A DNA stretch of 64,000 nucleotides from Ascidiella aspersa. Lineage: Eukaryota. The number at the start of each line of letters is the position of its first letter. Position 1 is the stretch's first letter. The translations under genes and the position numbers were made by a program. The notes under the pieces are model-generated. The model saw only the letters and a program-made list of their open reading frames with translations. It did not search any database and was not told where the DNA came from. This document shows positions 24,402 to 63,171 of the stretch, piece after piece. The stretch covers positions 29,512,001-29,576,000 of the forward strand of contig OZ004611.1 in the NCBI GenBank assembly GCA_963924565.1, in the 5' to 3' direction.

Positions 24402-24573
24402 CAGAGACCTAACATTGGTGGTATACGAGCCTCATCCACGAGTTAACTTTGCAACTTCAATCGGGAAGGCAAAGAGTGAGCCCCTTCAGCTGGCCAAGTT
24501 CCTCGTAAACAGATTATACTTGTTAGGCGAGTTCCCCCGGTTGTCGTGTGGTATCGTAGTCACGTTCCTCGAC

Positions 24574-24760
24574 TTGGAGCCCGACGACTCTCTTTTGAGA
24601 GCGTGAGGCACAGATACTGGTTTGGAGCCCGACGACTCTCTGTTGAGAGCGTGAGGCGTAGATACTGGTTGGAAGCCCGACGACTCTCTGTTGAGAGCGT
24701 GAGGCCTAGTTTTTACTGGTTGGGAGCTCGACGACTATCTGTTGATAGCGTGAGGCACAG
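24574..24760 (+). repeat. 4 x 48-51 bp hairpin repeat in element 5' UTR (copy 2: about 38626-38812)
   Basis: GCCCGACGACTCTCTKTTGAGAGCGTGAGGC-type core recurring at about 24579, 24627, 24675, 24726. Confidence 0.9.
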
Positions 24761-24872
24761 TTTTCGTCCCCCGGTTTTCAGCGGCTCCTACGCGGCCATC
24801 CGCGCGCTCCGCCCCGGGCCTCTTCAGCAGCGGAGCTCCCGGCATTTTTTTGCCGCAGCCCTCACCCGCACT

Positions 24873-25455
24873 CCACCGGAGGTCCCTGCAGTTGCCGGTG
24901 TGCCATCCGGTGTTTGCTGCCCAGCTCTTGGCCTCACCCCACCGGAGGTCCCTGCAACGTTGGCCAGCTCTTCGGCCCTCTACCTCCAGTGTTCGCCGAC
25001 CCCCACCGGAGGTCCCTGCAGTTGCCGGTGTGCCATCCTGTGGTTGCTGCCCAGCTCTTGGCCTCACCCCACCGGAGGTCCCTGCAACGTTGGCCAGCTC
25101 TTCGGCCCTCTACCTCCAGTGTTCGCCGACCCCCACCGGAGGTCCCTGCAGTTGCCGGTCTGCCCTCTAGTGTCCACTGGTCGGCTCTCCACTGTACCCC
25201 ACCGGAGGTCCCTACAACTTCGGCAACTTTGTGGTGCTCTACCACCAGCGTCCAGCTACCCCCACCGGAGGTCCCTGCAACCTTGGACAGCCCAGCGGTC
25301 CTCTAACACCTGCACTCCGCCTCCACCACCGGAGGTCCCTGCACCTGCCCGCTGCTCTTAAGCCTTCACAACCGGAGGCTGTCGCAGCCGCCGGTCTGCC
25401 GTTTGTGCACCAGTTCCCGACCTTCACAACCGGAGGCTCTCGCAGCCGCCGGTCT
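24873..25455 (+). repeat. About 65-bp GC-rich repeat (10 ACCGGAGG cores, alternating 66/64-bp dimer) in element 5' UTR (copy 2: about 38925-39510)
   Basis: ACCGGAGG at 24875, 24941, 25005, 25071, 25135, 25201, 25264, 25328, 25371, 25429. Confidence 0.9.
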
Positions 25456-26059
25456 GTCGTAAGTTGCTGTACCCGCTGAAACCAGCCACCATCTCAACTG
25501 CGCCTCTCCCCACTCCATCTGCTCCCAACCAGCCTCACCGTCTCACCATCCGCTTCCAACCCATCCGCCTCAAAACCAGTTCTACCATCTGTTCCAAACC
25601 AGCCTGCTCATCCATCTGCCTCACCGCCTCACCATCTGCTCCAATCGCGACAACACCACCGAACGTGACTACGATCCACATCCATCTTCACCACACGACA
25701 ACCCACCACCACCTACGAAGAACTTGGCCCATCACCACCAGCAGCCCTTCACCCCTAACTCGCGGATTACACTCTGGATTAATACCATCAAAACACAAAG
25801 GATTATTCCACCTTTCATCGCTCTCAATCATCGCCGGATCCGACACCCTTCCCCCCCTGGTTGGCCCACATCGCCGGTCTCCTTCTAAACAAGTATTTTA
25901 GCATAACCTTCTATCCTTTTTGGCCGAGAAGCACCTAACTTTAATTTAATTTATCATACTCCCCCTCGGTTATATCTTTTAATACCCTCCCCCCCCTGCA
26001 ACTCAAGCAATTTTAATAAGGACTCGCGCCGGCTCTAAATTGTGCTTCCTCGGTCCCTC

Positions 26060-26573
26060 TACCAGTTTTATATCTTACCTTTTTATTATTACATTACATA
26101 CATTTTACTACTACATATTATTACATACGTCTCGCTCTTTTACAATTTTACTGTGCCACGACTACTCGCAGACTTATATTTTACCTTTTTATTATCACAT
26201 ATTATTACATAAATTTTACTATTACATATTATTACACATTATTACATACGTCTCGCTCTTTTACAATTTTACTGTGCCACGACTACTCGCAGACTTATAT
26301 TTTACCTTTTTATTATTACATATTATTACAAACATTTTATTATTACATATTACTACATATTATTACATACATTATATTATTACATATTATTACACATTAT
26401 TACATACGTCTCGCCCTTCTACAATTTTACTGTGCCACGACTACTCGCAGACTTATATTTTACCTTTTTATTATCACATATTATTACATACATTTTACTA
26501 TTACATACTATTACACATTATTACATACGTCTCGCTCTTTTACAATTTTACTGTGCCACGACTATTCGCAGAC
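26060..26573 (+). repeat. AT-rich compound repeat: (TATTACAYAT)n blocks alternating with 4 copies of a ~46-bp core ending TCGCAGACT (copy 2: about 40115-40627)
   Basis: Core CGTCTCGCTCTTTTACAATTTTACTGTGCCACGACTACTCGCAGACT near 26128, 26249, 26407, 26528. Confidence 0.9.
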
Positions 26574-26593
26574 TGTACACCGGTCCCAACGTC

Positions 26594-29500
26594 ATGAACG
26601 TTCAACCACCGCGTCGCAGGCTTCGCCCAGCAGTTCGTTCACGCGCGGATCAGGGGACGGCATCATCCAAACCAACCAAAGATGCCCCATCGCAGGAGGA
26701 AGCCCCACCCTTGTCGGTAACGTTTAGGGGGCCCGGGGATTCCGTGTTTCGGTGCGGGGTTAGTGGCTGTTCTATGGTCTCGGCAGCGCTCCAATCAGTC
26801 AAGCGCCATTTGGCATCTGTACATGGCTTGGCTGTTGGAGTGCTGGACGCGGCCTGTGGGAAGTGTTCCGCTTCCTTCAGGTCGCGTGGCTCCCTCATTA
26901 ACGTGAGGGACCATTACCGTGCCTGTGGAGCAGTCGCCCCCGCCGCTGCACCGCGGACTCCTCGGGCCTTTTGCTGCCCAGTCTGCGATAGTCGCTGGCC
27001 GTCTCTCGTAGCTGCCAAGTCCCACCATTACCAAAAGCACCCGGGCGGGCCGTCACGCAATAACAACAGCTTTGTGGTGGCCCCCGGTCTGTTATCACCT
27101 CGGCGTAGCATTAAACAACGCCCCTTTACTCTGAACGTGCGCTACGTCGACGCGGCTACCACCTATAAATGCCCCGTGCCGGCTTGCCCGAAAGGTAATG
27201 ACGGATACGCTAGAGTCCGAACATTAAAAACCCACCTCAGTACTTGTCACAAAATTAATAACGTCTTACTTAGGGTAGTATGTGGCAAGTGCGAGTGCGT
27301 CGTCGCCGACAAGGCTATGTCCTTATTGCCCGCCTCTTCGCACTTTAAATCATGTTCTGGCTCTGGCAAACCCCCGAGCATCCCGGTGCCCATACTCCCA
27401 CCCTCGCCCGCGAACCACTCTGTTGGGGAGGACTCTGATAGTTCTACAGTTGGCAAGGTCCCTTCGCTGATCTTCTATCAGTCGAAGGCTTCGATAAATA
27501 CCACCCCGCCCTCGGACAGTGAGTTTTTGTATGGCCACGTCTCTCCCCCAAGTGGGAGTTCTCACTGTTCTTCAGTAACGCTAATTTCCCCCATCGCTAC
27601 GGTTGCGCCGGTGTTGTCGTACGCCGATGCAGTCCGTACGCCATCTCCAAAGCTGTCACAGATAGATCTAGTTACCCCACCAAACCTACCAACCGTGGGC
27701 ATTCAGAATTCCTTTTCGGCAGAGTGCGTCGACCCTTACCAGCCTTCCGAGGTTTCGAGCGTCATCAACGCGACCTCACCATCTGGTCCCCCTTCGTTCA
27801 CGCTCCTTAGGAGCTGGCTAAACACTCCTTGCACCGGGAGTACCAGGCGCGTTCCGGTAGAGATCCCGCAGATCTCTCCTTCTCGCCTCGCTCGACTGGC
27901 AGTTACAATTAGGGATCACTATCGTTCAAGGGTTAACGTCGCCACGGGGGTCTCGCCTGATCCGAAGCCACCGAAAGCGAGCGTGTTTCTCTCTGGAGAA
28001 ACACCTGGCCGCGAAGTGGTGAAAGTGAAGGAGGGGCCGCCAGTTCAAGGAGGGTGGACGGATCGTCCGACACAGCAACTTCTTGTGTCGAACCTTCTTT
28101 CTGCCGGAGAACTGGACCAGGCTACATCACCTCCCGAGGTGGTGGAGCCGTGCGTTGCCGAGGCTACCGTTGCGGGAGCGGGGGAGGTGTCGGCGGCAGG
28201 GAACTGCCCGTCGCCTGAACCCGTTCCGGGCGCGCCAGAGCGACCGGCCGTGAAGACCAGGTGTGAATGGGAGGCCTTGTTGCCGAGCAGTCCGCCTGTG
28301 TCCGATCAGGTCCCAGTACCCGTGGTTGGAGACGTGTCCCACCGAAGTCCTGTTGCAAGCTCTGAAAATGCGTCAAGCTCATTGCCTGTTAGATGTAACG
28401 TTAACGACCCACCTTTAACCGACCCCAGTAATGACGACTTGAGAGCTCGCCTTGCGCATGTAATTGACGCCCATTCTTCCCCCGATAGTTTCGGCGAGCT
28501 CGAGCACGCATTAGAGGAGTGGACCAAACTCGCTGGCTCTGTAGACATTACGCGTAAGCAGCGCAAGCCTCGATACAACCGCGGTGCTCAGCACCGTGCG
28601 ACCACCAACCGCGAGCGCGGCCACCCCAACAAGACAACCATACCAATAAAGGGGGCGGCCGCCAAAGGGCAGTGCTTGCGCTCAGCGTTCTGGCGAGACC
28701 AGCGAGCTACGGTTCGCCGCATCACGGACGGGTTAAAAGGGGAGGTCAAATGTGGGATAGCTCCTCGAGTCATCGAGGAGAAGTTTCGCGCCGACCTTAA
28801 GGCACCGGGGGCGTACGAGCATCTCGAGCCGGTACCAAGCTGGATGCGAGCCACGACGGGAGGGGGAGATGCGTCATCGGGGGCTTCTGGCGGTGTGGAC
28901 TCTGCTCCAATATCTCCGCGCGAGGTGGAGATGGTTCTCCAGTCCGTTAACACTGCTTCGGCGGCAGGATCTGACGGGTTGTCCTATGGCTTTTGGAAGG
29001 CTCTAGATCCCAAGGGCATCGTCCTTGCGGAGCTTTTCGAGAGGTGTAGGATCGCTCGTCGGATTCCCGCGCAGTGGCGTAAGTCGAAAGTCACTCTGAT
29101 CTGCAAGGATCCGGGCGGCGACCTCGACGACGTCTCGAACTGGAGACCCATTTCCATCTGTCGCAACTTGTACAAGTTGTACGCGGCGGTGTTGGCGCGG
29201 CGTTTGCAGCGCTGGGCGCTCGACGGTGGCGTTATTTCTCCTGAACAGAAGGGTTTCATGCCAGTGGAAGGAACGTTCGAGCATGTTTTCGTGTTGGACT
29301 CAGCCTGGGTAGATGCACGACAGGCGAAGAAGGACATCTTCGTCGCCTGGCTCGACGTCAAGAACGCCTTCGGCAGTATCCGTCACGATTGTATTCGTAG
29401 CATAATGGACGAGCTTCAGGTTCCTGACTACTTGATTGAGTGCGTTGCTGATATCTACGTTGGTAACACGTGTGTCGTTCGCACGGCGGGTGGTGTTACC

Positions 29501-31309
29501 AACGAGATACCAGTAGGGCGAGGGGTACGCCAAGGCTGCCCCTTGTCCGGCCTCGTATTCAATCTGGTGGCCGAGGTTCTTGTTAGAGGGGTCAAAGCTC
29601 GCGCCGGTTGCGGATACAGATTCGATTGCGCTCCTAATGTCTTTTCCCAAGTGCTGGCATACGCTGACGACGGGTGTCTCATCTCGAGCTCGAGGTCACA
29701 GATGTGCGAGCAGCTGAAAGTGTGTGAGGAGTTCGCCGGCTGGGCAGGTATCCGTTTTAACCCGAAAAAATGCCGCATAATGAACCAGGTGCTGGTTGGA
29801 AGTCGCCGACAACGGGATCCGCAGCCTTTCTCGCTCTCGGGCGAGGAGGTCAAGGTGATTGGTCTGGGCGAATTCTACCGCTACTTGGGAGTGCGGCAGG
29901 GATACCTTCCTGACACTCGATCGAACACCACCCTCGAGTTGTCTGCCGAGCGAATCAAGCGACTCTTTGAGTCGCCCCTCACGCCACACCAGAAGCTGCT
30001 GGCACTGAAGCGATTCGAGCTCCCCCGTCTGAGCTTCATCTTGAGGTTGCGGCATTTTCCGGTAAAGGAGTTGAGGAAGGTGGACTCTACGGTGCGGCGT
30101 TGCGTGCGCATTTCACTCCGCCTCCCAACACGAACGTGCGTGGCTTTTTACCACACGTCAGCAGACAGCGGAGGCCTGGGGATCCCGTCGATTGCCGCCG
30201 AGGGCGACATACTGGCGGTGACACAGGCCTTCAAAATGCTGACAGCACCGGACTGGCGGGTGCGCGCCGTGGCCGTGGGTCGACTCGAATCTCTCTCGAA
30301 ACGGATGGCCAAAGCTGAAAGTGTCGATGCCGGTGCGATGGCAGCTTTCATATCAGGGGGCAACGTCAGTGGTAACGGGTGCGGAGCGGGCGGAAGTCTG
30401 GAACGAGACTTGTTTACGTTTGTACGCAAGGCCTCGGAAAGGATCGATGTTCAATTCGTCGCGGGCGCTGACGGGCAGTTTTCTGTGACGTCTGGTGACA
30501 AGACGTTATCCCCCAGCAACCGGGCAGTATTTACCAGGACCCTCCACGCCTTACAATCAAAGCGTTGGAGGGAAGTGTGGGCCAGTCATCCAGACCAAGG
30601 TAAGACCGTAGGGGCCCACACCCAATACGGTTATTCGAACCACTGGTTGAAGAACCCCGGGGCTCTGACTATTCCAGAGCGCATTTTCGCGATGAAAGCA
30701 CGCCTCAACCTCCTTCCTGTCAAGAAGGTTCGGGAACGATTTCACGGGGGACAGTCAGACGTTAGGTGCTGCAGATGCGGCAGTTCGGCCGAGACACTTC
30801 CCCACGTACTCAACCACTGTGTTCCCGTCATGCCCCAAATCCTATCTCGGCACGACGCCATACAGGGGGAAGTGTTGCGCCACGTACCTTCAGGGACCTT
30901 CACCAAGGTTTCTTGTGACCGAGTTTGCCGGGAGCACGCCGATGCCACGGGTGAGAACCTCCGGCCAGACTTGATTGTCGAGAGCGCCGACAGGTTCTTA
31001 GTCGTGGACTTTGCGTGCCCTTTCGAAAACGGCCAAGTTGCCCTTACCGCTGCTGCGGCCCGTAAGCACCAAAAGTACAGGGAGTTGTGTGGAAACTTGG
31101 CCCGTGTTTCCAAGAAGCGAGTCCTTTTCCACACCTTCATCATCGGCTCCCTGGGCAGCTATGCTCAAGGCAACAATTCCACCCTCAGCGCCTTGGGCAT
31201 CACGGGCCGTCGTATGACGGAGGTAGCCAGAGCATGCTCAGCTCTGGCTATCAAGGGTAGCCACCACGTGTGGCAATCTTGGTGCAGGGGGATTGTTACC
31301 AAACCTTAA
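26594..31309 (+). CDS. Retrotransposon polyprotein: N-terminal zinc fingers, reverse transcriptase, CCHC knuckle, restriction-like endonuclease (1571 aa from first ATG)
   Basis: SAAGSDGL, NWRPISI, QKGF, WLDVKNAFGSI, GVRQGCPLS, LAYADD; CRCGSSAETLPHVLNHC; RHD; RPDLIV..VVDFACPFE..KHQKY. The track start at 26432 is a GTG inside the AT-rich repeat; first ATG is 26594. Confidence 0.95.
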   Translation: MNVQPPRRRLRPAVRSRADQGTASSKPTKDAPSQEEAPPLSVTFRGPGDSVFRCGVSGCSMVSAALQSVKRHLASVHGLAVGVLDAACGKCSASFRSRGSLINVRDHYRACGAVAPAAAPRTPRAFCCPVCDSRWPSLVAAKSHHYQKHPGGPSRNNNSFVVAPGLLSPRRSIKQRPFTLNVRYVDAATTYKCPVPACPKGNDGYARVRTLKTHLSTCHKINNVLLRVVCGKCECVVADKAMSLLPASSHFKSCSGSGKPPSIPVPILPPSPANHSVGEDSDSSTVGKVPSLIFYQSKASINTTPPSDSEFLYGHVSPPSGSSHCSSVTLISPIATVAPVLSYADAVRTPSPKLSQIDLVTPPNLPTVGIQNSFSAECVDPYQPSEVSSVINATSPSGPPSFTLLRSWLNTPCTGSTRRVPVEIPQISPSRLARLAVTIRDHYRSRVNVATGVSPDPKPPKASVFLSGETPGREVVKVKEGPPVQGGWTDRPTQQLLVSNLLSAGELDQATSPPEVVEPCVAEATVAGAGEVSAAGNCPSPEPVPGAPERPAVKTRCEWEALLPSSPPVSDQVPVPVVGDVSHRSPVASSENASSSLPVRCNVNDPPLTDPSNDDLRARLAHVIDAHSSPDSFGELEHALEEWTKLAGSVDITRKQRKPRYNRGAQHRATTNRERGHPNKTTIPIKGAAAKGQCLRSAFWRDQRATVRRITDGLKGEVKCGIAPRVIEEKFRADLKAPGAYEHLEPVPSWMRATTGGGDASSGASGGVDSAPISPREVEMVLQSVNTASAAGSDGLSYGFWKALDPKGIVLAELFERCRIARRIPAQWRKSKVTLICKDPGGDLDDVSNWRPISICRNLYKLYAAVLARRLQRWALDGGVISPEQKGFMPVEGTFEHVFVLDSAWVDARQAKKDIFVAWLDVKNAFGSIRHDCIRSIMDELQVPDYLIECVADIYVGNTCVVRTAGGVTNEIPVGRGVRQGCPLSGLVFNLVAEVLVRGVKARAGCGYRFDCAPNVFSQVLAYADDGCLISSSRSQMCEQLKVCEEFAGWAGIRFNPKKCRIMNQVLVGSRRQRDPQPFSLSGEEVKVIGLGEFYRYLGVRQGYLPDTRSNTTLELSAERIKRLFESPLTPHQKLLALKRFELPRLSFILRLRHFPVKELRKVDSTVRRCVRISLRLPTRTCVAFYHTSADSGGLGIPSIAAEGDILAVTQAFKMLTAPDWRVRAVAVGRLESLSKRMAKAESVDAGAMAAFISGGNVSGNGCGAGGSLERDLFTFVRKASERIDVQFVAGADGQFSVTSGDKTLSPSNRAVFTRTLHALQSKRWREVWASHPDQGKTVGAHTQYGYSNHWLKNPGALTIPERIFAMKARLNLLPVKKVRERFHGGQSDVRCCRCGSSAETLPHVLNHCVPVMPQILSRHDAIQGEVLRHVPSGTFTKVSCDRVCREHADATGENLRPDLIVESADRFLVVDFACPFENGQVALTAAAARKHQKYRELCGNLARVSKKRVLFHTFIIGSLGSYAQGNNSTLSALGITGRRMTEVARACSALAIKGSHHVWQSWCRGIVTKP

Positions 31310-32511
31310 ACCATCCTTTGCAAGCGCAGACTGGCACCACACAAACACAAACCGGACGATCACGGCGGCGGGGCATCAACTTAACCGCAAATAAACCAGC
31401 TCACCAGTACGTTCATCAATCAGCCAACAACCCAGCCCACTCACCACCCCATCACCTCGGAAAACTTCAGCCCTTTGACCCCAGCTCTATCCACGCCCCG
31501 CCGCCAACCCCTCCTCGCACTCCAATGTTAAAGCTGGCCTCCTCCAATCAAAACCCACTCCTGATAGTTTCGCCGAGGTGCTCCCAACTCTTCAACCGCG
31601 CGGCAGCCGGGGACCAACTCTCCAAACACTTTAACGTTCCAACGTTCGTCTATCGTCCCCGGCCAACACCTTCAACAGTTCCGCCCGCCACACCAGTCGA
31701 ATCATCGTCAACGGCAAAAGGGCGGATGCCGCGCGGTCAACACCTCACCTCTTCACACCAATGGGGCCGGCTAGGAAGCCTGCCCCCGAACTGTCTGGCA
31801 CCAACACTGGAGCACCTCGGCCCCCCAACCAACACGGAGGCCAGCAGGCCGGCGCACGTCGCCGACCCACTAATTCGCACCATCCCCACCCGGTTTGCAC
31901 AACACTTAGCTTTTAAATCTTTTTTTTTGTCTTAGGTAGCTCGTTTTTAACCGCTTTACCGCCCCAAAATTGCACTTACTAGCAATTAAAGCACTTACCG
32001 CACTTAAACCTCTTTCAAGTTTTAAATGCACCCCCCCTTTTTTTATATATATGCAAAGTTCCGAACTATTTTTTATATTTACATTGTTTTTAAATATTTT
32101 TATACCCACACCCCGTGTACTTTTTTCGCCACCCTCACCCCTTTCCACTCACTAGGCACACTTCCAAAATATGTATCTAAATTACACAATACCATACCCG
32201 AGCCCAGTCTGCGCCAGTCCCTCTGTTCCTCCTGCGACGTCTCCTGCAAGCCCTACCATCGGCGGGCCCCACAATTCACTTAGCTTATAACTTAACTAAT
32301 CTGGCCCTAACTTTTTTAAATTTACCTTTTTTTTCCACAGTAATCATCAAATCTTAACCAAACCAAACCCACAAATTCTATCACCCATCGCCGTTACGGC
32401 GGTGGAGGCCGAGCGTGCAACGCACAATACTTATTGCCGGCGAAGCCTGTTTATATTGTCGTTTTCGTGTTTTATCGCCGTCAACACAATAAACCGGTGT
32501 ACAGTCAAAAG

Positions 32512-32661
32512 TCTGTTCTTCTCAGTTTAATACCTGGGACGCAAGCGATTCGCTTGCTCTTTGTATTAACCTGATTTTTGGACAGGGAGCACGGTGCCGA
32601 AGCTTGCTTCGCCCTGCTCACGGGTTGTCCTGGTATTGCAGTACCTCCAGGCACGGCCCAC
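32512..32661 (+). pseudogene. U2: 3' remnant (nt 41 to end) of U2 disrupted by element copy 1
   Basis: U2 resumes at TCTGTTCTTCTCAG directly after element end GTCAAAAG. Confidence 0.93.
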
Positions 32662-38453: not shown

Positions 38454-41400
38454 CAGAGACCTAACATTGGTGGTATACGAGCCTCATCCACGAGTTAACT
38501 TTGCATCTTCAATCGGGAAGGCAAAGAGTGAGCCCCTTCAGCTGGCCAAGTTCCTCGTAAACAGACTATACTTGTTAGGCGAGTTCCCCCGGTTGTCGTG
38601 TGGTATCGTAGTCACGTTCCTCGACTTGGAGCCCGACGACTCTCTTTTGAGAGCGTGAGGCACAGATACTGGTTTGGAGCCCGACGACTCTCTGTTGAGA
38701 GCGTGAGGCGTAGATACTGGTTGGAAGCCCGACGACTCTCTGTTGAGAGCGTGAGGCCTAGTTTTTACTGGTTGGGAGCTCGACGACTATCTGTTGATAG
38801 CGTGAGGCACAGTTTTCGTCCCCCGGTTTTCAGCGGCTCCTACGCGGCCATCCGCGCGCTCCGCCCCGGGCCTCTTCAGCAGCGGAGCTCCCGGCATTTC
38901 TTTGCCGCAGCCCTCACCCGCACTCCACCGGAGGTCCCTGCAGTTGCCGGTGTGCCATCCGGTGTTTGCTGCCCAGCTCTTGGCCTCACCCCACCGGAGG
39001 TCCCTGCAACGTTGGCCAGCTCTTCGGCCCTCTACCTCCAGTGTTCGCCGACCCCCACCGGAGGTCTCTGCAGTTGCCGGTGTGCCATCCTGTGGTTGCT
39101 GCCCAGCTCTTGGCCTCACCCCACCGGAGGTCCCTGCAACGTTGGCCAGCTCTTCGGCCCTCTACCTCCAGTGTTCGCCGACCCCCACCGGAGGTCCCTG
39201 CAGTTGCCGGTCTGCCCTCTAGTGTCCACTGGTCGGCTCTCCACTGTACCCCACCGGAGGTCCCTACAACTTCGGCAACTTTGTGGTGCTCTACCACCAG
39301 CGTCCAGCTACCCCCACCGGAGGTCCCTGCAACCTTGGACAGCCCAGCGGTCCTCTAACAACACCTGCACTCCGCCTCCACCACCGGAGGTCCCTGCACC
39401 TGCCCGCTGCTCTTAAGCCTTCACAACCGGAGGCTGTCGCAGCCGCCGGTCTGCCGTTTGTGCACCAGTTCCCGACCTTCACAACCGGAGGCTCTCGCAG
39501 CCGCCGGTCTGTCGTAAGTTGCTGTACCCGCTGAAACCAGCCACCACCTCAACTGCGCCTCTCCCCACTCCATCTGCTCCCAACCAGCCTCACCGTCTCA
39601 CCATCCGCTTCCAACCCATCCGCCTCAAAACCAGTTCTACCATCTGTTCCAAACCAGCCTGCCCATCCATCTGCCTCACCGCCTCACCATCTGCTCCAAT
39701 CTCGACAACACCACCGAACGTGACTACGATCCACATCCATCTTCACCACACGACAACCCACTACCACCTACGAAGAACTTGGCCCATCACCACCAGCAGC
39801 CCTTCACCCCTAACTCGCGGATTACACTCTGGATTAATACCACCAAAACACAAAGGATTATTCCACCTTTCATCGCTCTCAATCATCGCCGGATCCGACA
39901 CCCTTCCCCCCCTGGTTGGCCCACATCGCCGGTCTCCTTCTAAACAAGTATTTTAGCATAACCTTCTATCCTTTTTGGCCGAGAAGCACCTAACTTTAAT
40001 TTAATTTATCATACTCCCCCTTGGTTATATCTTTTAATACCCTCCCCCCCTGCAACTCAAGCAATTTTAATAAGGACTCGCGCCGGCTCTAAATTGTGCT
40101 TCCTCGGTCCCTCTACCAGTTTTATATCTTACCTTTTTATTATTACATTACATACATTTTACTACTACATATTATTACATATTATTACACACGTCTCGCT
40201 CTTTTACAATTTTACTGTGCCACGACTACTCGCAGACTTATATTTTACCTTTTTATTATCACATATTATTACATAAATTTTACTATTACATATTATTACA
40301 CATTATTACATACGTCTCGCTCTTTTACAATTTTACTGTGCCACGACTACTCGCAGACTTATATTTTACCTTTTTATTATTAAATATTATTACAAACATT
40401 TTATTATTACATATTATTACATACATTATATTATTACATATTATTACACATTATTACATACGTCTCGCCCTTCTACAATTTTACTGTGCCACGACTACTC
40501 GCAGACTTATATTTTACCTTTTTATTATCACATATTATTACATACATTTTACTATTACATACTATTACACATTATTACATACGTCTCGCTCTTTTACAAT
40601 TTTACTGTGCCACGACTATTCGCAGACTGTACACCGGTCCCAACGTCATGAACGTTCAACCACCGCGTCGCAGGCTTCGCCCAGCAGTTCGTTCACGCGC
40701 GGATCAGGGGACGGCATCATCCAAACCAACCAAAGATGCCCCATCGCAGGAGGAAGCCCCACCCTTGTCGGTAACGTTTAGGGGGCCCGGGGATTCCGTG
40801 TTTCGGTGCGGGGTTAGTGGCTGTTCTATGGTCTCGGCAGCGCTCCAATCAGTCAAGCGCCATTTGGCATCTGTACATGGCTTGGCTGTTGGAGTGCTGG
40901 ACGCGGCCTGTGGGAAGTGTTCCGCTTCCTTCAGGTCGCGTGGCTCCCTCATTAACGTGAGGGACCATTACCGTGCCTGTGGAGCAGTCGCCCCCGCCGC
41001 TGCACCGCGGACTCCTCGGGCCTTTTGCTGCCCAGTCTGCGATAGTCGCTGGCCGTCTCTCGTAGCTGCCAAGTCCCACCATTACCAAAAGCACCCGGGC
41101 GGGCCGTCACGCAATAACAACAGCTTTGTGGTGGCCCCCGGTCTGTTATCACCTCGGCGTAGCATTAAACAACGCCCCTTTACTCTGAACGTGCGCTACG
41201 TCGACGCGGCTACCACCTATAAATGCCCCGTGCCGGCTTGCCCGAAAGGTAATGACGGATACGCTAGAGTCCGAACATTAAAAACCCACCTCAGTACTTG
41301 TCACAAAATTAATAACGTCTTACTTAGGGTAGTATGTGGCAAGTGCGAGTGCGTCGTCGCCGACAAGGCTATGTCCTTATTGCCCGCCTCTTCGCACTTT

Positions 41401-44400
41401 AAATCATGTTCTGGCTCTGGCAAACCCCCGAGCATCCCGGTGCCCATACTCCCACCCTCGCCCGCGAACCACTCTGTTGGGGAGGACTCTGATAGTTCTA
41501 CAGTTGGCAAGGTCCCTTCGCTGATCTTCTATCAGTCGAAGGCTTCGATAAATACCACCCCGCCCTCGGACAGTGAGTTTTTGTATGGCCACGTCTCTCC
41601 CCCAAGTGGGAGTTCTCACTGTTCTTCAGTAACGCTAATTTCCCCCATCGCTACGGTTGCGCCGGTGTTGTCGTACGCCGATGCAGTCCGTACGCCATCT
41701 CCAAAGCTGTCACAGATAGATCTAGTTACCCCACCAAACCTACCAACCGTGGGCATTCAGAATTCCTTTTCGGCAGAGTGCGTCGACCCTTACCAGCCTT
41801 CCGAGGTTTCGAGCGTCATCAACGCGACCTCACCATCTGGTCCCCCTTCGTTCACGCTCCTTAGGAGCTGGCTAAACACTCCTTGCACCGGGAGTACCAG
41901 GCGCGTTCCGGTAGAGATCCCGCAGATCTCTCCTTCTCGCCTCGCTCGACTGGCAGTTACAATTAGGGATCACTATCGTTCAAGGGTTAACGTCGCCACG
42001 GGGGTCTCGCCTGATCCGAAGCCACCGAAAGCGAGCGTGTTTCTCTCTGGAGAAACACCTGGCCGCGAAGTGGTGAAAGTGAAGGAGGGGCCGCCAGTTC
42101 AAGGAGGGTGGACGGATCGTCCGACACAGCAACTTCTTGTGTCGAACCTTCTTTCTGCCGGAGAACTGGACCAGGCTACATCACCTCCCGAGGTGGTGGA
42201 GCCGTGCGTTGCCGAGGCTACCGTTGCGGGAGCGGGGGAGGTGTCGGCGGCAGGGAACTGCCCGTCGCCTGAACCCGTTCCGGGCGCGCCAGAGCGACCG
42301 GCCGTGAAGACCAGGTGTGAATGGGAGGCCTTGTTGCCGAGCAGTCCGCCTGTGTCCGATCAGGTCCCAGTACCCGTGGTTGGAGACGTGTCCCACCGAA
42401 GTCCTGTTGCAAGCTCTGAAAATGCGTCAAGCTCATTGCCTGTTAGATGTAACGTTAACGACCCACCTTTAACCGACCCCAGTAATGACGACTTGAGAGC
42501 TCGCCTTGCGCATGTAATTGACGCCCATTCTTCCCCCGATAGTTTCGGCGAGCTCGAGCACGCATTAGAGGAGTGGACCAAACTCGCTGGCTCTGTAGAC
42601 ATTACGCGTAAGCAGCGCAAGCCTCGATACAACCGCGGTGCTCAGCACCGTGCGACCACCAACCGCGAGCGCGGCCACCCCAACAAGACAACCATACCAG
42701 TAAAGGGGGCGGCCGCCAAAGGGCAGTGCTTGCGCTCAGCGTTCTGGCGAGACCAGCGAGCTACGGTTCGCCGCATCACGGACGGGTTAAAAGGGGAGGT
42801 CAAATGTGGGATAGCTCCTCGAGTCATCGAGGAGAAGTTTCGCGCCGACCTTAAGGCACCGGGGGCGTACGAGCATCTCGAGCCGGTACCAAGCTGGATG
42901 CGAGCCACGACGGGAGGGGGAGATGCGTCATCGGGGGCTTCTGGCGGTGTAGACTCTGCTCCAATATCTCCGCACGAGGTGGAGATGGTTCTCCAGTCCG
43001 TTAACACTGCTTCGGCGGCAGGATCCGACGGGTTGTCCTATGGCTTTTGGAGGGCTCTAGATCCCAGGGGCATCGTCCTTGCGGAGCTTTTCGAGAGGTG
43101 TAGGATCGCTCGTCGGATTCCCGCGCAGTGGCGTAAGTCGAAAGTCACTCTGATCTGCAAGGATCCGGGCGGCGACCTCGACGACGTCTCGAACTGGAGA
43201 CCCATTTCCATCTGTCGCAACTTGTACAAGTTGTACGCGGCGGTGTTGGCGCGGCGTTTGCAGCGCTGGGCGCTCGACGGTGGCGTTATTTCTCCTGAAC
43301 AGAAGGGTTTCATGCCAGTGGAAGGAACGTTCGAGCATGTTTTCGTGTTGGACTCAGCCTGGGTAGATGCACGACAGGCGAAGAAGAACATCTTCGTCGC
43401 CTGGCTCGACGTCAAGAACGCCTTCGGCAGTATCCGTCACGATTGTATTCGTAGCATAATGGACGAGCTTCAAGTTCCTGACTACTTGATTGAGTGCGTT
43501 GCTGATATCTACGTTGGTAACACGTGTGTCGTTCGCACGGCGGGTGGTGTTACCAACGAGATACCAGTAGGGCGAGGGGTACGCCAAGGCTGCCCCTTGT
43601 CCGGCCTCGTATTCAATCTGGTGGCCGAGGTTCTTGTTAGAGGGGTCAAAGCTCGCGCCGGTTGCGGATACAGATTCGATTGCGCTCCTAATGTCTTTTC
43701 CCAAGTGCTGGCATACGCTGACGACGGGTGTCTCATCTCGAGCTCGAGGTCACAGATGTGCGAGCAGCTGAAAGTGTGTGAGGAGTTCGCCGGCTGGGCA
43801 GGTATCCGTTTTAACCCGAAAAAATGCCGCATAATGAACCAGGTGCTGGTTGGAAGTCGCCGACAACGGGATCCGCAGCCTTTCTCGCTCTCGGGCGAGG
43901 AGGTCAAGGTGATTGGTCTGGGCGAATTCTACCGCTACTTGGGAGTGCGGCAGGGATACCTTCCTGACACTCGATCGAACACCACCCTCGAGTTGTCTGC
44001 CGAGCGAATCAAGCGACTCTTTGAGTCGCCCCTCACGCCACACCAGAAGCTGCTGGCACTGAAGCGATTCGAGCTCCCCCGTCTGAGCTTCATCTTGAGG
44101 TTGCGGCATTTTCCGGTAAAGGAGTTGAGGAAGGTGGACTCTACGGTGCGGCGTTGCGTGCGCATTTCACTCCGCCTCCCAACACGAACGTGCGTGGCTT
44201 TTTACCACACGTCAGCAGACAGCGGAGGCCTGGGGATCCCGTCGATTGCCGCCGAGGGCGACATACTGGCGGTGACACAGGCCTTCAAAATGCTGACAGC
44301 ACCGGACTGGCGGGTGCGCGCCGTGGCCGTGGGTCGACTCGAATCTCTCTCGAAACGGATGGCCAAAGCTGAAAGTGTCGATGCCGGTGCGATGGCAGCT

Positions 44401-46559
44401 TTCATATCAGGGGGCAACGTCAGTGGTAACGGGTGCGGAGCGGGCGGAAGTCTGGAACGAGACTTGTTTACGTTTGTACGCAAGGCCTCGGAAAGGATCG
44501 ATGTTCAATTCGTCGCGGGCGCTGACGGGCAGTTTTCTGTGACGTCTGGTGACAAGACGTTATCCCCCAGCAACCGGGCAGTATTTACCAGGACCCTCCA
44601 CGCCTTACAATCAAAGCGTTGGAGGGAAGTGTGGGCCAGTCATCCAGACCAAGGTAAGACCGTAGGGGCCCACACCCAATACGGTTATTCGAACCACTGG
44701 TTGAAGAACCCCGGGGCTCTGACTATTCCAGAGCGCATTTTCGCGATGAAAGCACGCCTCAACCTCCTTCCTGTCAAGAAGGTTCGGGAACGATTTCACG
44801 GGGGACAGTCAGACGTTAGGTGCTGCAGATGCGGCAGTTCGGCCGAGACACTTCCCCACGTACTCAACCACTGTGTTCCCGTCATGCCCCAAATCCTATC
44901 TCGGCACGACGCCATACAGGGGGAAGTGTTGCGCCACGTACCTTCAGGGACCTTCACCAAGGTTTCTTGTGACCGAGTTTGCCGGGAGCACGCCGATGCC
45001 ACGGGTGAGAACCTCCGGCCAGACTTGATTGTCGAGAGCGCCGACAGGTTCTTAGTCGTGGACTTTGCGTGCCCTTTCGAAAACGGCCAAGTTGCCCTTA
45101 CCGCTGCTGCGGCCCGTAAGCACCAAAAGTACAGGGAGTTGTGTGGAAACTTGGCCCGTGTTTCCAAGAAGCGAGTCCTTTTCCACACCTTCATCATCGG
45201 CTCCCTGGGCAGCTATGCTCAAGGCAACAATTCCACCCTCAGCGCCTTGGGCATCACGGGCCGTCGTATGACGGAGGTAGCCAGAGCATGCTCAGCTCTG
45301 GCTATCAAGGGTAGCCACCACGTGTGGCAATCTTGGTGCAGGGGGATTGTTACCAAACCTTAAACCATCCTTTGCAAGCGCAGACTGGCACCACACAAAC
45401 ACAAACCGGACGATCACGGCGGCGGGGCATCAACTTAACCGCAAATAAACCAGCTCACCAGTACGTTCATCAATCAGCCAACAACCCAGCCCACTCACCC
45501 CATCACCTCGGAAAACTTCAGCCCTTTGACCCCAGCTCTATCCACGCCCCGCCGCCAACCCCTCCTCGCACTCCAATGTTAAAGCTGGCCTCCTCCAATC
45601 AAAACCCACTCCTGATAGTTTCGCCGAGGTGCTCCCAACTCTTCAACCGCGCGGCAGCCGGGGACCAACTCTCCAAACACTTTAACGTTCCAACGTTCGT
45701 CTATCGTCCCCGGCCAACACCTTCAACAGTTCCGCCCGCCACACCAGTCGAATCATCGTCAACGGCAAAAGGGCGGATGCCGCGCGGTCAACACCTCACC
45801 TCTTCACACCAATGGGGCCGGCTAGGAAGCCTGCCCCCGAACTGTCTGGCACCAACACTGGAGCACCTCGGCCCCCCAACCCACACGGAGGCCAGCAGGC
45901 CGGCGCACGTCGCCGACCCACTAATTCGCACCATCCCCACCCGGTTTGCACAACACTTAGCTTTTAAATCTCTTTTTTTGTCTTAGGTAGCTCGTTTTTA
46001 ACCGCTTTACCGCCCCAAAATTGCACTTACTAGCAATTAAAGCACTTACCGCACTTAAACCTCTTTCAAGTTTTAAATGCACCCCCCCTTTTTTTATATA
46101 TGCAAAGTTCCGAACTATTTTTTATATTTACATTGTTTTTAAATATTTTTATACCCACACCCCGTGTACTTTTTTCGCCACCCTCACCCCTTTCCACTCA
46201 CTAGGCACACTTCCAAAATATGTATCTAAATTACACAATACCATACCCGAGCCCAGTCTGCGCCAGTCCCTCTGTTCCTCCTGCGACGTCTCCTGCAAGC
46301 CCTACCATCGGCGGGCCCCACAATTCACTTAGCTTATAACTTAACTAATCTGGCCCTAACTTTTTTAAATTTACCTTTTTTTCCACAGTAATCATCAAAT
46401 CTTAACCAAACCAAACCCACAAATTCTATCACCCATCGCCGTTACGGCGGTGGAGGCCGAGCGTGCAACGCACAATACTTATTGCCGGCGAAGCCTGTTT
46501 ATATTGTCGTTTTCGTGTTTTATCGCCGTCAACACAATAAACCGGTGTACAGTCAAAAG
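38454..46559 (+). mobile_element. Full-length U2-specific non-LTR retrotransposon (Utopia-like), copy 2, 8106 bp
   Basis: Same 5' and 3' junctions in U2 as copy 1; near-identical sequence with scattered substitutions and small indels. Confidence 0.95.
40648..45363 (+). CDS. Retrotransposon polyprotein (ZF-RT-CCHC-RLE), copy 2, intact
   Basis: Same motifs as copy 1; five amino-acid differences visible in the track (I/V, R/H, K/R, K/R, D/N). Confidence 0.95.
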   Translation: MNVQPPRRRLRPAVRSRADQGTASSKPTKDAPSQEEAPPLSVTFRGPGDSVFRCGVSGCSMVSAALQSVKRHLASVHGLAVGVLDAACGKCSASFRSRGSLINVRDHYRACGAVAPAAAPRTPRAFCCPVCDSRWPSLVAAKSHHYQKHPGGPSRNNNSFVVAPGLLSPRRSIKQRPFTLNVRYVDAATTYKCPVPACPKGNDGYARVRTLKTHLSTCHKINNVLLRVVCGKCECVVADKAMSLLPASSHFKSCSGSGKPPSIPVPILPPSPANHSVGEDSDSSTVGKVPSLIFYQSKASINTTPPSDSEFLYGHVSPPSGSSHCSSVTLISPIATVAPVLSYADAVRTPSPKLSQIDLVTPPNLPTVGIQNSFSAECVDPYQPSEVSSVINATSPSGPPSFTLLRSWLNTPCTGSTRRVPVEIPQISPSRLARLAVTIRDHYRSRVNVATGVSPDPKPPKASVFLSGETPGREVVKVKEGPPVQGGWTDRPTQQLLVSNLLSAGELDQATSPPEVVEPCVAEATVAGAGEVSAAGNCPSPEPVPGAPERPAVKTRCEWEALLPSSPPVSDQVPVPVVGDVSHRSPVASSENASSSLPVRCNVNDPPLTDPSNDDLRARLAHVIDAHSSPDSFGELEHALEEWTKLAGSVDITRKQRKPRYNRGAQHRATTNRERGHPNKTTIPVKGAAAKGQCLRSAFWRDQRATVRRITDGLKGEVKCGIAPRVIEEKFRADLKAPGAYEHLEPVPSWMRATTGGGDASSGASGGVDSAPISPHEVEMVLQSVNTASAAGSDGLSYGFWRALDPRGIVLAELFERCRIARRIPAQWRKSKVTLICKDPGGDLDDVSNWRPISICRNLYKLYAAVLARRLQRWALDGGVISPEQKGFMPVEGTFEHVFVLDSAWVDARQAKKNIFVAWLDVKNAFGSIRHDCIRSIMDELQVPDYLIECVADIYVGNTCVVRTAGGVTNEIPVGRGVRQGCPLSGLVFNLVAEVLVRGVKARAGCGYRFDCAPNVFSQVLAYADDGCLISSSRSQMCEQLKVCEEFAGWAGIRFNPKKCRIMNQVLVGSRRQRDPQPFSLSGEEVKVIGLGEFYRYLGVRQGYLPDTRSNTTLELSAERIKRLFESPLTPHQKLLALKRFELPRLSFILRLRHFPVKELRKVDSTVRRCVRISLRLPTRTCVAFYHTSADSGGLGIPSIAAEGDILAVTQAFKMLTAPDWRVRAVAVGRLESLSKRMAKAESVDAGAMAAFISGGNVSGNGCGAGGSLERDLFTFVRKASERIDVQFVAGADGQFSVTSGDKTLSPSNRAVFTRTLHALQSKRWREVWASHPDQGKTVGAHTQYGYSNHWLKNPGALTIPERIFAMKARLNLLPVKKVRERFHGGQSDVRCCRCGSSAETLPHVLNHCVPVMPQILSRHDAIQGEVLRHVPSGTFTKVSCDRVCREHADATGENLRPDLIVESADRFLVVDFACPFENGQVALTAAAARKHQKYRELCGNLARVSKKRVLFHTFIIGSLGSYAQGNNSTLSALGITGRRMTEVARACSALAIKGSHHVWQSWCRGIVTKP

Positions 46560-63000: not shown

Positions 63001-63171
63001 TAATCATCAAATCTTAACCAAACCAAACCCACAAATTCTATCACCCATCGCCGTTACGGCGGTGGAGGCCGAGCGTGCAACGCACAATACTTATTGCCGG
63101 CGAAGCCTGTTTATATTGTCGTTTTCGTGTTTTATCGCCGTCAACACAATAAACCGGTGTACAGTCAAAAA
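60098..63171 (+). mobile_element. 5'-truncated copy (3.07 kb) of the U2-specific retrotransposon, copy 3
   Basis: Starts inside the RT domain; 3' end GTCAAAAA joined to U2 TCTGTTCTT at the same site as copies 1 and 2. Confidence 0.95.
60100..61971 (+). pseudogene. Partial retrotransposon ORF (C-terminal RT half, CCHC, RLE)
   Basis: Retains GVRQGCPLS, YADD and the endonuclease but lacks zinc fingers and the LDVKNAF motif. Confidence 0.9.

What the first reader, a model, noticed from the sequence alone, without database searches (positions are those of the whole stretch)
26571..32506. Perfect 14-nt complement links the start-codon region to the element's extreme 3' end
GACTGTACACCGGT (26571-26584, ending 9 nt before the ATG) is the exact reverse complement of ACCGGTGTACAGTC (32493-32506), which lies between the AATAAA and the terminal A run. 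The same pair is in copy 2 (40625-40638 and 46541-46554). A rough chance estimate (about 20 terminal positions x 8 kb / 4^14) is below 1e-3, before considering its placement at the ATG. I know of no such terminal inverted pairing as a standard feature of non-LTR elements. Inference: the mRNA circularises. This could be a switch between translation initiation and exposure of the 3' end for target-primed reverse transcription, or a device for cis-preference. If the 26571 acceptor is used, the two motifs would mark both ends of the processed mRNA.
Basis: partly seen in the sequence, partly recalled or inferred. Interest (0 to 1): 0.8.

Follow-up and report, generated by a model that had tools for sequence, protein, structure and literature searches.

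The report
Retrotransposon RNA with matching ends
A jumping gene that lives inside U2 snRNA genes carries four short sequence blocks around its start codon that are exact mirror-complements of blocks in its tail. This suggests its RNA folds head-to-tail as some RNA viruses do, which has not, as far as I could find, been described for this class of element.

Summary

- **The pair is exact.** GACTGTACACCGGT (26571-84; 40625-38) is the reverse complement of ACCGGTGTACAGTC (32493-506; 46541-54; also 63153-66 in a third, 5'-truncated copy).
- **It is one helix of four.** It is the outermost of four nested complementary blocks between the start-codon region and the 3'UTR: H1 14 bp, H2 12 bp, H2b about 12 bp, H3 12 bp. 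This chain is unique within the 8.1-kb element and was never reached in 3000 shuffles.
- **The host element** is an RLE-type non-LTR retrotransposon of the Utopia/YURE lineage. Its nearest proteins are tunicate. It sits at nt 38/39 of U2 genes in a U2-U1-U6 tandem array.
- **The blocks are conserved.** A paralogous subfamily about 75% identical keeps the blocks while the spacers diverge. Synonymous sites inside the coding-side helices are frozen (8/8 against 19/40).
- **Limits.** No compensatory change was seen. Five distant relatives (44-49% aa) lack any equivalent. The one RNA-seq run gave almost no reads, so transcript ends and the proposed acceptor are untested.

Best reading: a selected long-range 5'-3' RNA pairing (cyclization), analogous to flavivirus UAR/CS and Ty1 CYC5/CYC3. 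The proposed role, coupling translation to target-primed reverse transcription, is inference.

The parts
24402..32511 (+). Full-length element copy 1 (8.1 kb) inserted in a U2 snRNA gene. U2 nt 1-17 lie upstream and U2 resumes at nt 39 at 32512.
   Evidence: the 1193-bp U2-U1-U6 array is interrupted by 8087 bp; junction sequences were read directly.
26571..26584 (+). H1 5' arm, GACTGTACACCGGT, at -23 to -10 from the ATG. Its first G is the G of a possible AG acceptor.
   Evidence: Invariant in the C1 subfamily copy and in copy 6.
26594..31309 (+). Single ORF of 1571 aa: N-terminal zinc fingers, RT (YADD), C-terminal CCHC and an RPD..D restriction-like endonuclease motif.
   Evidence: Homologues.
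26616..26627 (+). H2 5' arm, GCAGGCTTCGCC, codons 8-12.
   Evidence: Conserved, with no synonymous change.
26636..26648 (+). H2b 5' arm, CGTTCACGCGCGG.
   Evidence: The C1 copy has a perfect 12-mer, TGCACGCGCGGC, at the homologous place.
26690..26701 (+). H3 5' arm, TCGCAGGAGGAA.
32226..32237 (+). H3 3' arm, TTCCTCCTGCGA, in the 3'UTR.
32409..32422 (+). H2b 3' arm, CCGAGCGTGCAACG.
32439..32450 (+). H2 3' arm, GGCGAAGCCTGT.
   Evidence: Fully conserved in the C1 copy and in L044.
32488..32511 (+). 3' terminus: AATAAA, then the H1 3' arm ACCGGTGTACAGTC (32493-32506), then AAAAG.
   Evidence: Identical in four independent 3' ends.
38454..46559 (+). Full-length element copy 2. Its helices are at 40625-38, 40670-81, 40690-702, 40744-55 / 46275-86, 46457-70, 46487-98, 46541-54.
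   Evidence: exact re-location of each block.
63153..63166 (+). 3' arm of the third, 5'-truncated copy. This copy has no 5' arm.

Best explanation
The 14-nt pair is the terminal helix of a selected, discontinuous long-range base-pairing between the start-codon neighbourhood and the 3'UTR/3' terminus of the element's plus-strand RNA. In other words, the RNA cyclizes. Shown: four nested helices exist, with computed energies of H1 -25, H2 -25, H2b -18 and H3 -23 kcal/mol. They place the AUG in a 31-nt internal loop between H1 and H2, and they tie up the last 14 templated nucleotides, which overlap the AATAAA signal. Inferred: the closed form and active translation exclude each other, because ribosomes must melt H1 to scan and must melt H2, H2b and H3 to elongate. 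The closed form brings the ORF-start RNA next to the 3' end where target-primed reverse transcription begins. In R2, the ORF-start RNA is the 5' protein-binding motif. The pairing would therefore mark an intact, untranslated, full-length RNA as template and favour action in cis. Whether pairing is within one molecule or between molecules is not resolved.
For: The exact pair is present in every copy that has both ends. The nested chain of complementary blocks scores 37. This is unique among 378 windows of the element (next best 11), and 0 of 3000 shuffles reach it. RNAcofold MFE recovers H1, H2, H2b and H3, and it recovers the homologous helices in the C1 subfamily copy. The chain score in that copy is 48, again the only outlier. 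The C1 copy (about 75-78% nt identity) keeps both H1 arms perfectly, although the flanks do not align and the arm-to-ATG spacing changes from 9 nt to 1 nt. The 3'UTR alignment shows the arms as conserved islands beside a 33-nt indel. Spacers between blocks show no inverted similarity, so this is not a relic of an inverted duplication. Inside H2/H2b/H3, 8 of 8 degenerate same-amino-acid codons are identical. The figure is 19 of 40 in the rest of the N-terminal block and 61% ORF-wide. A third variant (copy 6) and the close relatives X3 and X4 carry changes next to the 5'-side helices but none inside them.
Against: No compensatory (covarying) substitution was seen, because the arms are invariant wherever both are present. 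Only two or three subfamilies of one genome support conservation, and they are not fully independent. Five more distant relatives (44-49% aa) show no equivalent complementarity. One of them shares the nt-39 U2 site. There is no RNA-level evidence: the RNA-seq run gave 11 poorly matching reads out of 7.8 M records read. Three helices have palindromic cores (ACCGGT/TGTACA, GGC..GCC, CGCGCG), which makes complementary matches somewhat easier to get. Plus- and minus-strand energies do not clearly discriminate RNA from cDNA. The 3' tail motif also survives at old fragments that have no 5' arm, so it is constrained for some reason of its own as well.
Confidence: 0.6

Rival explanations
1. The two arms are constrained independently and the complementarity is coincidental. 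The 3' arm would be the RT-recognition or 3'-processing tail. The 5' arm would be a splice-acceptor, translation-context or promoter element.
For: The 16-mer ATAAACCGGTGTACAG also ends old fragments that lack any 5' arm. The 5' arm begins at the AG of the last of four repeated acceptor-like units. Distant relatives lack the pairing. The 14-mer is built of two palindromic hexamers that therefore occur on the same strand in both arms.
Against: This does not explain three more nested perfect blocks of 11-12 nt, the 0/3000 shuffle result, or the uniqueness of the ATG window. It also does not explain the frozen synonymous sites in the coding-side arms.
Confidence: 0.12
2. The pairing acts on DNA rather than RNA. 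Either the minus-strand cDNA forms the same panhandle during or after first-strand synthesis, helping second-strand steps or template switching, or the inverted repeats act in double-stranded DNA.
For: The helices are almost purely Watson-Crick, so they form equally well in the complementary strand. The RLE-LINE integration model involves branched DNA intermediates (PMC6895275).
Against: The 5' arm lies 2.2 kb inside the full-length copy, not at a cDNA end, so it cannot prime or bridge the junction. No 5'-truncated copy begins at the arm (the third copy starts elsewhere). The net dimer gain is larger for the plus strand (-53.7 against -40.6 kcal/mol).
Confidence: 0.13
3. The arms pair between molecules, giving head-to-tail RNA dimers or multimers. 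Alternatively, helix H1 is a double-stranded processing mark that defines both ends of an mRNA cut out of a read-through U2-promoter co-transcript.
For: The palindromic cores resemble dimer-initiation motifs. The arms lie exactly at the candidate acceptor and just before the poly(A) site. The 5' leader looks like decayed U2, which suggests co-transcription from the U2 start. A cDNA-like contig of a relative reads through into U2.
Against: There is no transcript evidence at all. H2-H3 lie inside the ORF and the 3'UTR, which fits a cyclization platform better than an end-mark.
Confidence: 0.1

Closest known systems
Flavivirus genome cyclization (5'UAR/DAR/CS with 3'UAR/DAR/CS)
   Same: Several short discontinuous complementary blocks lie both upstream and just downstream of the AUG and pair with the 3' terminal region. 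The closed form competes with translation and serves template use by the polymerase (PMC6765113, PMC5101012).
   Different: That system is an RNA virus replicated by an RdRp, with experimentally proven and covarying pairs. Here the element is a nuclear non-LTR retrotransposon, nothing is tested, there is no covariation, and the span is 5.9 kb.
Ty1 LTR-retrotransposon CYC5/CYC3 interaction
   Same: A retroelement RNA in which a 5' sequence near the start of the coding region pairs with a sequence near the 3' end, and the pairing is needed for reverse transcription (PMC3592414).
   Different: Ty1 is tRNA-primed inside virus-like particles and the pairing assists initiation and strand transfer. 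This element uses target-primed reverse transcription at a nicked U2 gene.
R2 element 5' and 3' protein-binding-motif RNAs
   Same: An RLE-type site-specific LINE in which an RNA segment at the 5' region and the 3'UTR jointly coordinate cleavage and TPRT (PMC6895275). The positions correspond to the two regions paired here.
   Different: In R2 the two RNA segments are described as bound separately by protein, not base-paired to each other. No sequence or Rfam similarity was found.
Utopia / YURE U2-targeting elements (Kojima & Jurka 2015, PMC4640811)
   Same: Single ORF with zinc fingers, RT and RLE. The 3' junction is exactly at U2 nt 39, and the copies sit in U2 gene arrays.
   Different: The sections of that paper that I read (Results and Discussion, parts 1-2) describe no 5'-3' complementarity. 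The nearest proteins here are tunicate (YURE-like), and several of those relatives use another U2 site (about nt 57/62).

Membership tests
Utopia (U2-targeting RLE non-LTR retrotransposons, NeSL clade) | 3' flank is the U2 snRNA gene starting at nucleotide 39 (TCTGTTC...) | tested here: met
   ...ACAGTCAAAAG|TCTGTTCTTCTCAG in all copies. Site as described in PMC4640811.
Utopia (U2-targeting RLE non-LTR retrotransposons, NeSL clade) | One ORF with N-terminal zinc fingers, a central RT, and a C-terminal zinc finger plus PD..D/ExK-type restriction-like endonuclease | tested here: met
   Pfam RVT_1. C2H2/CCHC fingers at aa 88-250, YADD at aa 1023, CCHC at aa 1392, RPD-(13)-D motif.
Utopia (U2-targeting RLE non-LTR retrotransposons, NeSL clade) | RT groups with Utopia in a phylogeny | not tested
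   No tree was built. Best hits are Clavelina and Ciona proteins at 46-49% and arthropod proteins at 31-34%. That Ciona Q76IM9 is YURECi is my recollection, not a test.
RNA cyclization elements (flavivirus UAR/CS type, Ty1 CYC5/CYC3 type) | Complementary sequences near the start codon and near the 3' end, beyond chance | tested here: met
RNA cyclization elements (flavivirus UAR/CS type, Ty1 CYC5/CYC3 type) | Pairing maintained across relatives, ideally by compensatory changes | tested here: inconclusive
   Kept unchanged in the C1 subfamily and copy 6. H2b and H3 shift their limits but show no clean double change. Absent in 5 distant relatives.
RNA cyclization elements (flavivirus UAR/CS type, Ty1 CYC5/CYC3 type) | The duplex forms in the RNA and is needed for replication or translation control | not testable with these tools
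   RNA-seq coverage was essentially nil. No probing data are available.
R2-type 5'/3' PBM RNAs | Element protein binds both RNA segments | not testable with these tools
   Positional analogy only (PMC6895275).

The most novel reading that the evidence does not exclude
This would be the first non-LTR (LINE-type) retrotransposon shown to use a virus-like, multi-helix 5'-3' RNA cyclization. The closed form would silence the start codon and hand the freshly made protein to the 3' end of its own RNA. That would give a base-pairing mechanism for cis-preference and for the switch from translation to target-primed reverse transcription.
Probability: 0.3. Interest if true: 0.8.

Novelty: new variant of a known kind. 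Interest (0 to 1): 0.62.

Why it matters
Two questions about LINE-type elements remain open. One is how the RNA is chosen in cis as template. The other is how events at its 5' and 3' ends are coordinated. In R2 the answer offered is two separately bound RNA motifs. A direct, conserved base-pairing between the ORF start and the 3' terminus would be a simple physical link, and it can be tested with disrupt-and-restore mutants. It would also parallel the cyclization logic of flaviviruses and Ty1. It bears on the design of RLE-LINE templates for site-specific insertion too, because template 5' and 3' structure influences efficiency there.

Tried and rejected
1. **Whole-region RNAduplex energy.** It is not specific: GC-rich ORF windows score as well. 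I replaced it with an exact-block chain test.
2. **Inverted-duplication or twin-priming relic.** Rejected, because the spacers show no inverted similarity.
3. **RNA evidence.** The look-up of sequencing runs found one RNA run of the species. Read laying on 26520-32519 gave 11 poor reads. There were no starts, no joints and no loose ends at 26571, so neither the acceptor nor the transcript ends could be tested. The contigs of the related organisms did not cover the 3' arm.
4. **Distant relatives.** I fetched Clavelina (L046/L047), TARA contigs (L048, L049, L051-54) and a Logan contig (L050). None has a tail-to-ATG complement above background. Their 5' ends and start codons are gene-caller guesses, so this absence is not strong.
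5. **Rfam.** A permissive scan of the 5'UTR and start region found nothing, including no HDV-like ribozyme and no R2 element. The gathering scan found only snRNAs.
7. **Other own-genome fragments (L055-L059, L062).** They carry no 5' arm, so they give no covariation test.
8. **U2 mimicry by the 3' arm.** GTGTACAGTC against U2 GTGTAGTATC matches 7 of 10, which is marginal, so I did not pursue it.
9. **First whole-protein word search.** It found only unrelated LINEs. The RT-RLE region search was needed.
Full report
**Observation**

The motif GACTGTACACCGGT is at 26571-26584 and 40625-40638. Its exact reverse complement is at 32493-32506 and 46541-46554, and also at 63153-63166. The 5' arm ends 9 nt before the ATG at 26594. 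The 3' arm begins on the last A of AATAAA and is followed by AAAAG and then by U2 sequence. The perfect match is exactly 14 nt. The 14-mer consists of two overlapping palindromes, ACCGGT and TGTACA.

**Context**

The window is a tandem array of 1193-bp units, each holding U2 (+), U1 (+) and U6 (-) snRNA genes. Two full-length 8.1-kb elements and one 5'-truncated copy interrupt U2 genes.

- Upstream of each insertion lie U2 nt 1-17. Downstream, U2 resumes at nt 39, TCTGTTC. This is the 3' site described for Utopia and Keno (PMC4640811).
- The first roughly 25 nt of the element look like a decayed copy of U2 nt 18-38. That would fit co-transcription from the U2 start. This is inference.
- The element has a 2.2-kb 5'UTR full of tandem repeats.
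- It has one ORF of 1571 aa with N-terminal zinc fingers, RT (Pfam RVT_1, YADD), a C-terminal CCHC and an RPD..D restriction-like endonuclease motif.
- It has a 1.2-kb 3'UTR.
- Its nearest proteins are from tunicates (Clavelina lepadiformis, Ciona intestinalis) and marine metagenomes at 44-49% identity. Arthropod proteins labelled R2 score 31-34%.
- The genome is 308.6 Mb.

**The pair is part of a larger pattern**

An inverted-repeat scan of the element lists, besides the 14-mer, perfect complements 26617-27/32439-49 (11 nt) and 26690-701/32226-37 (12 nt). These lie in the nested order expected of one antiparallel interaction.

- A colinear chain score of exact complementary blocks between the ATG window and the last 332 nt is 37. 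The best of all non-overlapping windows of the element is 11, and none of 3000 shuffles exceeds 20.
- RNAcofold of the two regions returns intermolecular helices H1 (26571-84:32493-506), H2 (26616-27:32439-50), H2b (26636-48:32409-22) and H3 (26690-701:32226-37). Their duplex energies are about -25, -25, -18 and -23 kcal/mol.
- The AUG sits in a 31-nt internal loop between H1 and H2.
- The spacers between blocks show no inverted similarity, so this is not the remnant of an inverted duplication or a twin-priming event.

**Conservation**

The genome holds four full-length copies and one truncated near-identical copy in this array, plus diverged fragments.

- A degenerate copy of another subfamily on contig C1 (L045), about 75-78% identical, has both ends. 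Both H1 arms are perfect although the flanks do not align. There the ATG follows the arm after 1 nt instead of 9.
- In the 3'UTR alignment the arms are conserved islands, and a 33-nt indel lies between H2 and H1.
- The same chain test on that copy gives 48, again the only outlier. Its H2b is a perfect 12-mer.
- H2b and H3 have slightly different limits in the two subfamilies, but I saw no clean compensatory change.
- In the coding-side arms, 8 of 8 degenerate codons with the same amino acid are identical. The figure is 19 of 40 in the rest of the N-terminal block and 61% ORF-wide.
- A sixth, 3'-truncated variant (L060) and contigs of two related organisms carry substitutions and indels next to the four 5'-side blocks but none within them.
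- The 3' tail ATAAACCGGTGTACAG also survives at the ends of old fragments elsewhere in the genome whose remaining 3'UTR is no longer recognisable. The tail therefore has a constraint of its own as well, plausibly recognition for reverse transcription.

**Limits**

- Five more distant relatives show no tail-to-ATG complementarity above background. They are Clavelina L047, TARA L048/L049/L051 and the cDNA-like Logan contig L050.
- Several of these relatives sit at a different U2 site, after about nt 57. L050 shares the nt-39 site.
- The feature is therefore lineage-specific, or it is replaced by something else in the other lineages.
- The only RNA-seq run of the species yielded 11 poorly matching reads from 7.8 M records read. 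There is thus no evidence on expression, transcript ends, or use of the AG at 26570-71.
- Plus- and minus-strand folding do not clearly separate an RNA role from a cDNA role.
- A permissive Rfam scan of the 5' region found nothing.

**Mechanism**

Shown: a statistically exceptional, conserved, multi-block complementarity exists between the start-codon region and the 3'UTR/terminus.

Inferred: it forms in the plus-strand RNA and closes the molecule. In the closed form, helices flank the AUG and cover the first 36 codons, and the last 14 templated nucleotides are paired. Scanning and elongating ribosomes would open it, so translation and the closed form exclude each other.

By analogy with R2, a 5' RNA motif and the 3'UTR coordinate the steps of integration (PMC6895275). 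That the R2 5' motif lies near the ORF start is my own knowledge, not a tool result. On this analogy the closed form would join the two RNA regions the protein needs. It would favour intact RNAs and action in cis.

The closest functional parallels are flavivirus cyclization, where circularization inhibits translation initiation (PMC6765113; PMC5101012), and Ty1 CYC5/CYC3 (PMC3592414). A full-text search found no paper linking non-LTR retrotransposons with such cyclization. This is a limited search and not proof of absence.

**Verdict**

The pairing interpretation is the best-supported reading (about 0.6). The specific functional claims are untested. I rate it a new variant of a known kind: 5'-3' cyclization, new for RLE/LINE-type elements. 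Interest is 0.62.

Noticed in passing
window 24492-24567 and 25661-25729: A second set of nested inverted repeats (16 nt at 94%, 15 nt and 14 nt perfect) brackets the tandem-repeat part of the 5'UTR. It could close a 1.1-kb domain.
   Followed up: no
window 24402-24430: The element's first bases (CAGAGACCTAACATTGGTGGTATAC) resemble U2 nt 18-38 with changes. This looks as if the template RNA starts at the U2 transcription start and the leader then decays. It agrees with an earlier scan note.
   Followed up: partly
window 26068-26574: Four copies of a 121-158-nt repeat end in ...TTTTACTGTGCCACGACTAYTCGCAG|ACT. Only the last copy is followed by the 5' arm; the others are followed by TATATTTTACC. 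AT-rich TATTATTACA microsatellite lies between them.
   Followed up: partly
L047 3677-3740 and 11800-11850; L048 1-60; L049 8100-8150: The closest available relatives (Clavelina, TARA contigs) also sit in U2 genes but at another site. Insertion is after about nt 57 (CAGTTT), and U2 resumes at CTGGGACGC (about nt 62). Target site has therefore shifted within U2 in this lineage.
   Followed up: partly
L050 1-22 and 6098-6150: The Logan contig of a relative (49% aa) carries SMART-type adaptor sequence at both ends and runs from the element into 31 nt of downstream U2. This looks like a cDNA of a read-through transcript.
   Followed up: no
G000 C2:37164494 and 37167603 (-); C5:7192485 and 7413719 (+); L058 5300-5470, L059: The 3'-terminal motif (A)ATAAACCGGTGTACAG(T/C)C ends other old fragments outside U2 arrays, without an A-run. 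The decayed 3'UTR pieces at C2:37.89/37.94 Mb have the arm changed at 3 positions.
   Followed up: partly
L060 1958-3592 (G000 C5:29602958-29604592): A sixth copy further along the array is a diverged variant (80% in the leader, 93% around the ATG). It stops after the equivalent of window 26807.
   Followed up: partly
window 26520-32519 (reads): The RNA-seq run of the same species label shows practically no reads on the element. The few reads present differ at many sites and probably come from diverged copies. The element looks silent in that sample.
   Followed up: yes
window 31270-31935: A 221-aa ORF overlaps the end of the main ORF in another frame and has no Pfam match. It is probably a by-product of GC-rich sequence.
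   Followed up: partly
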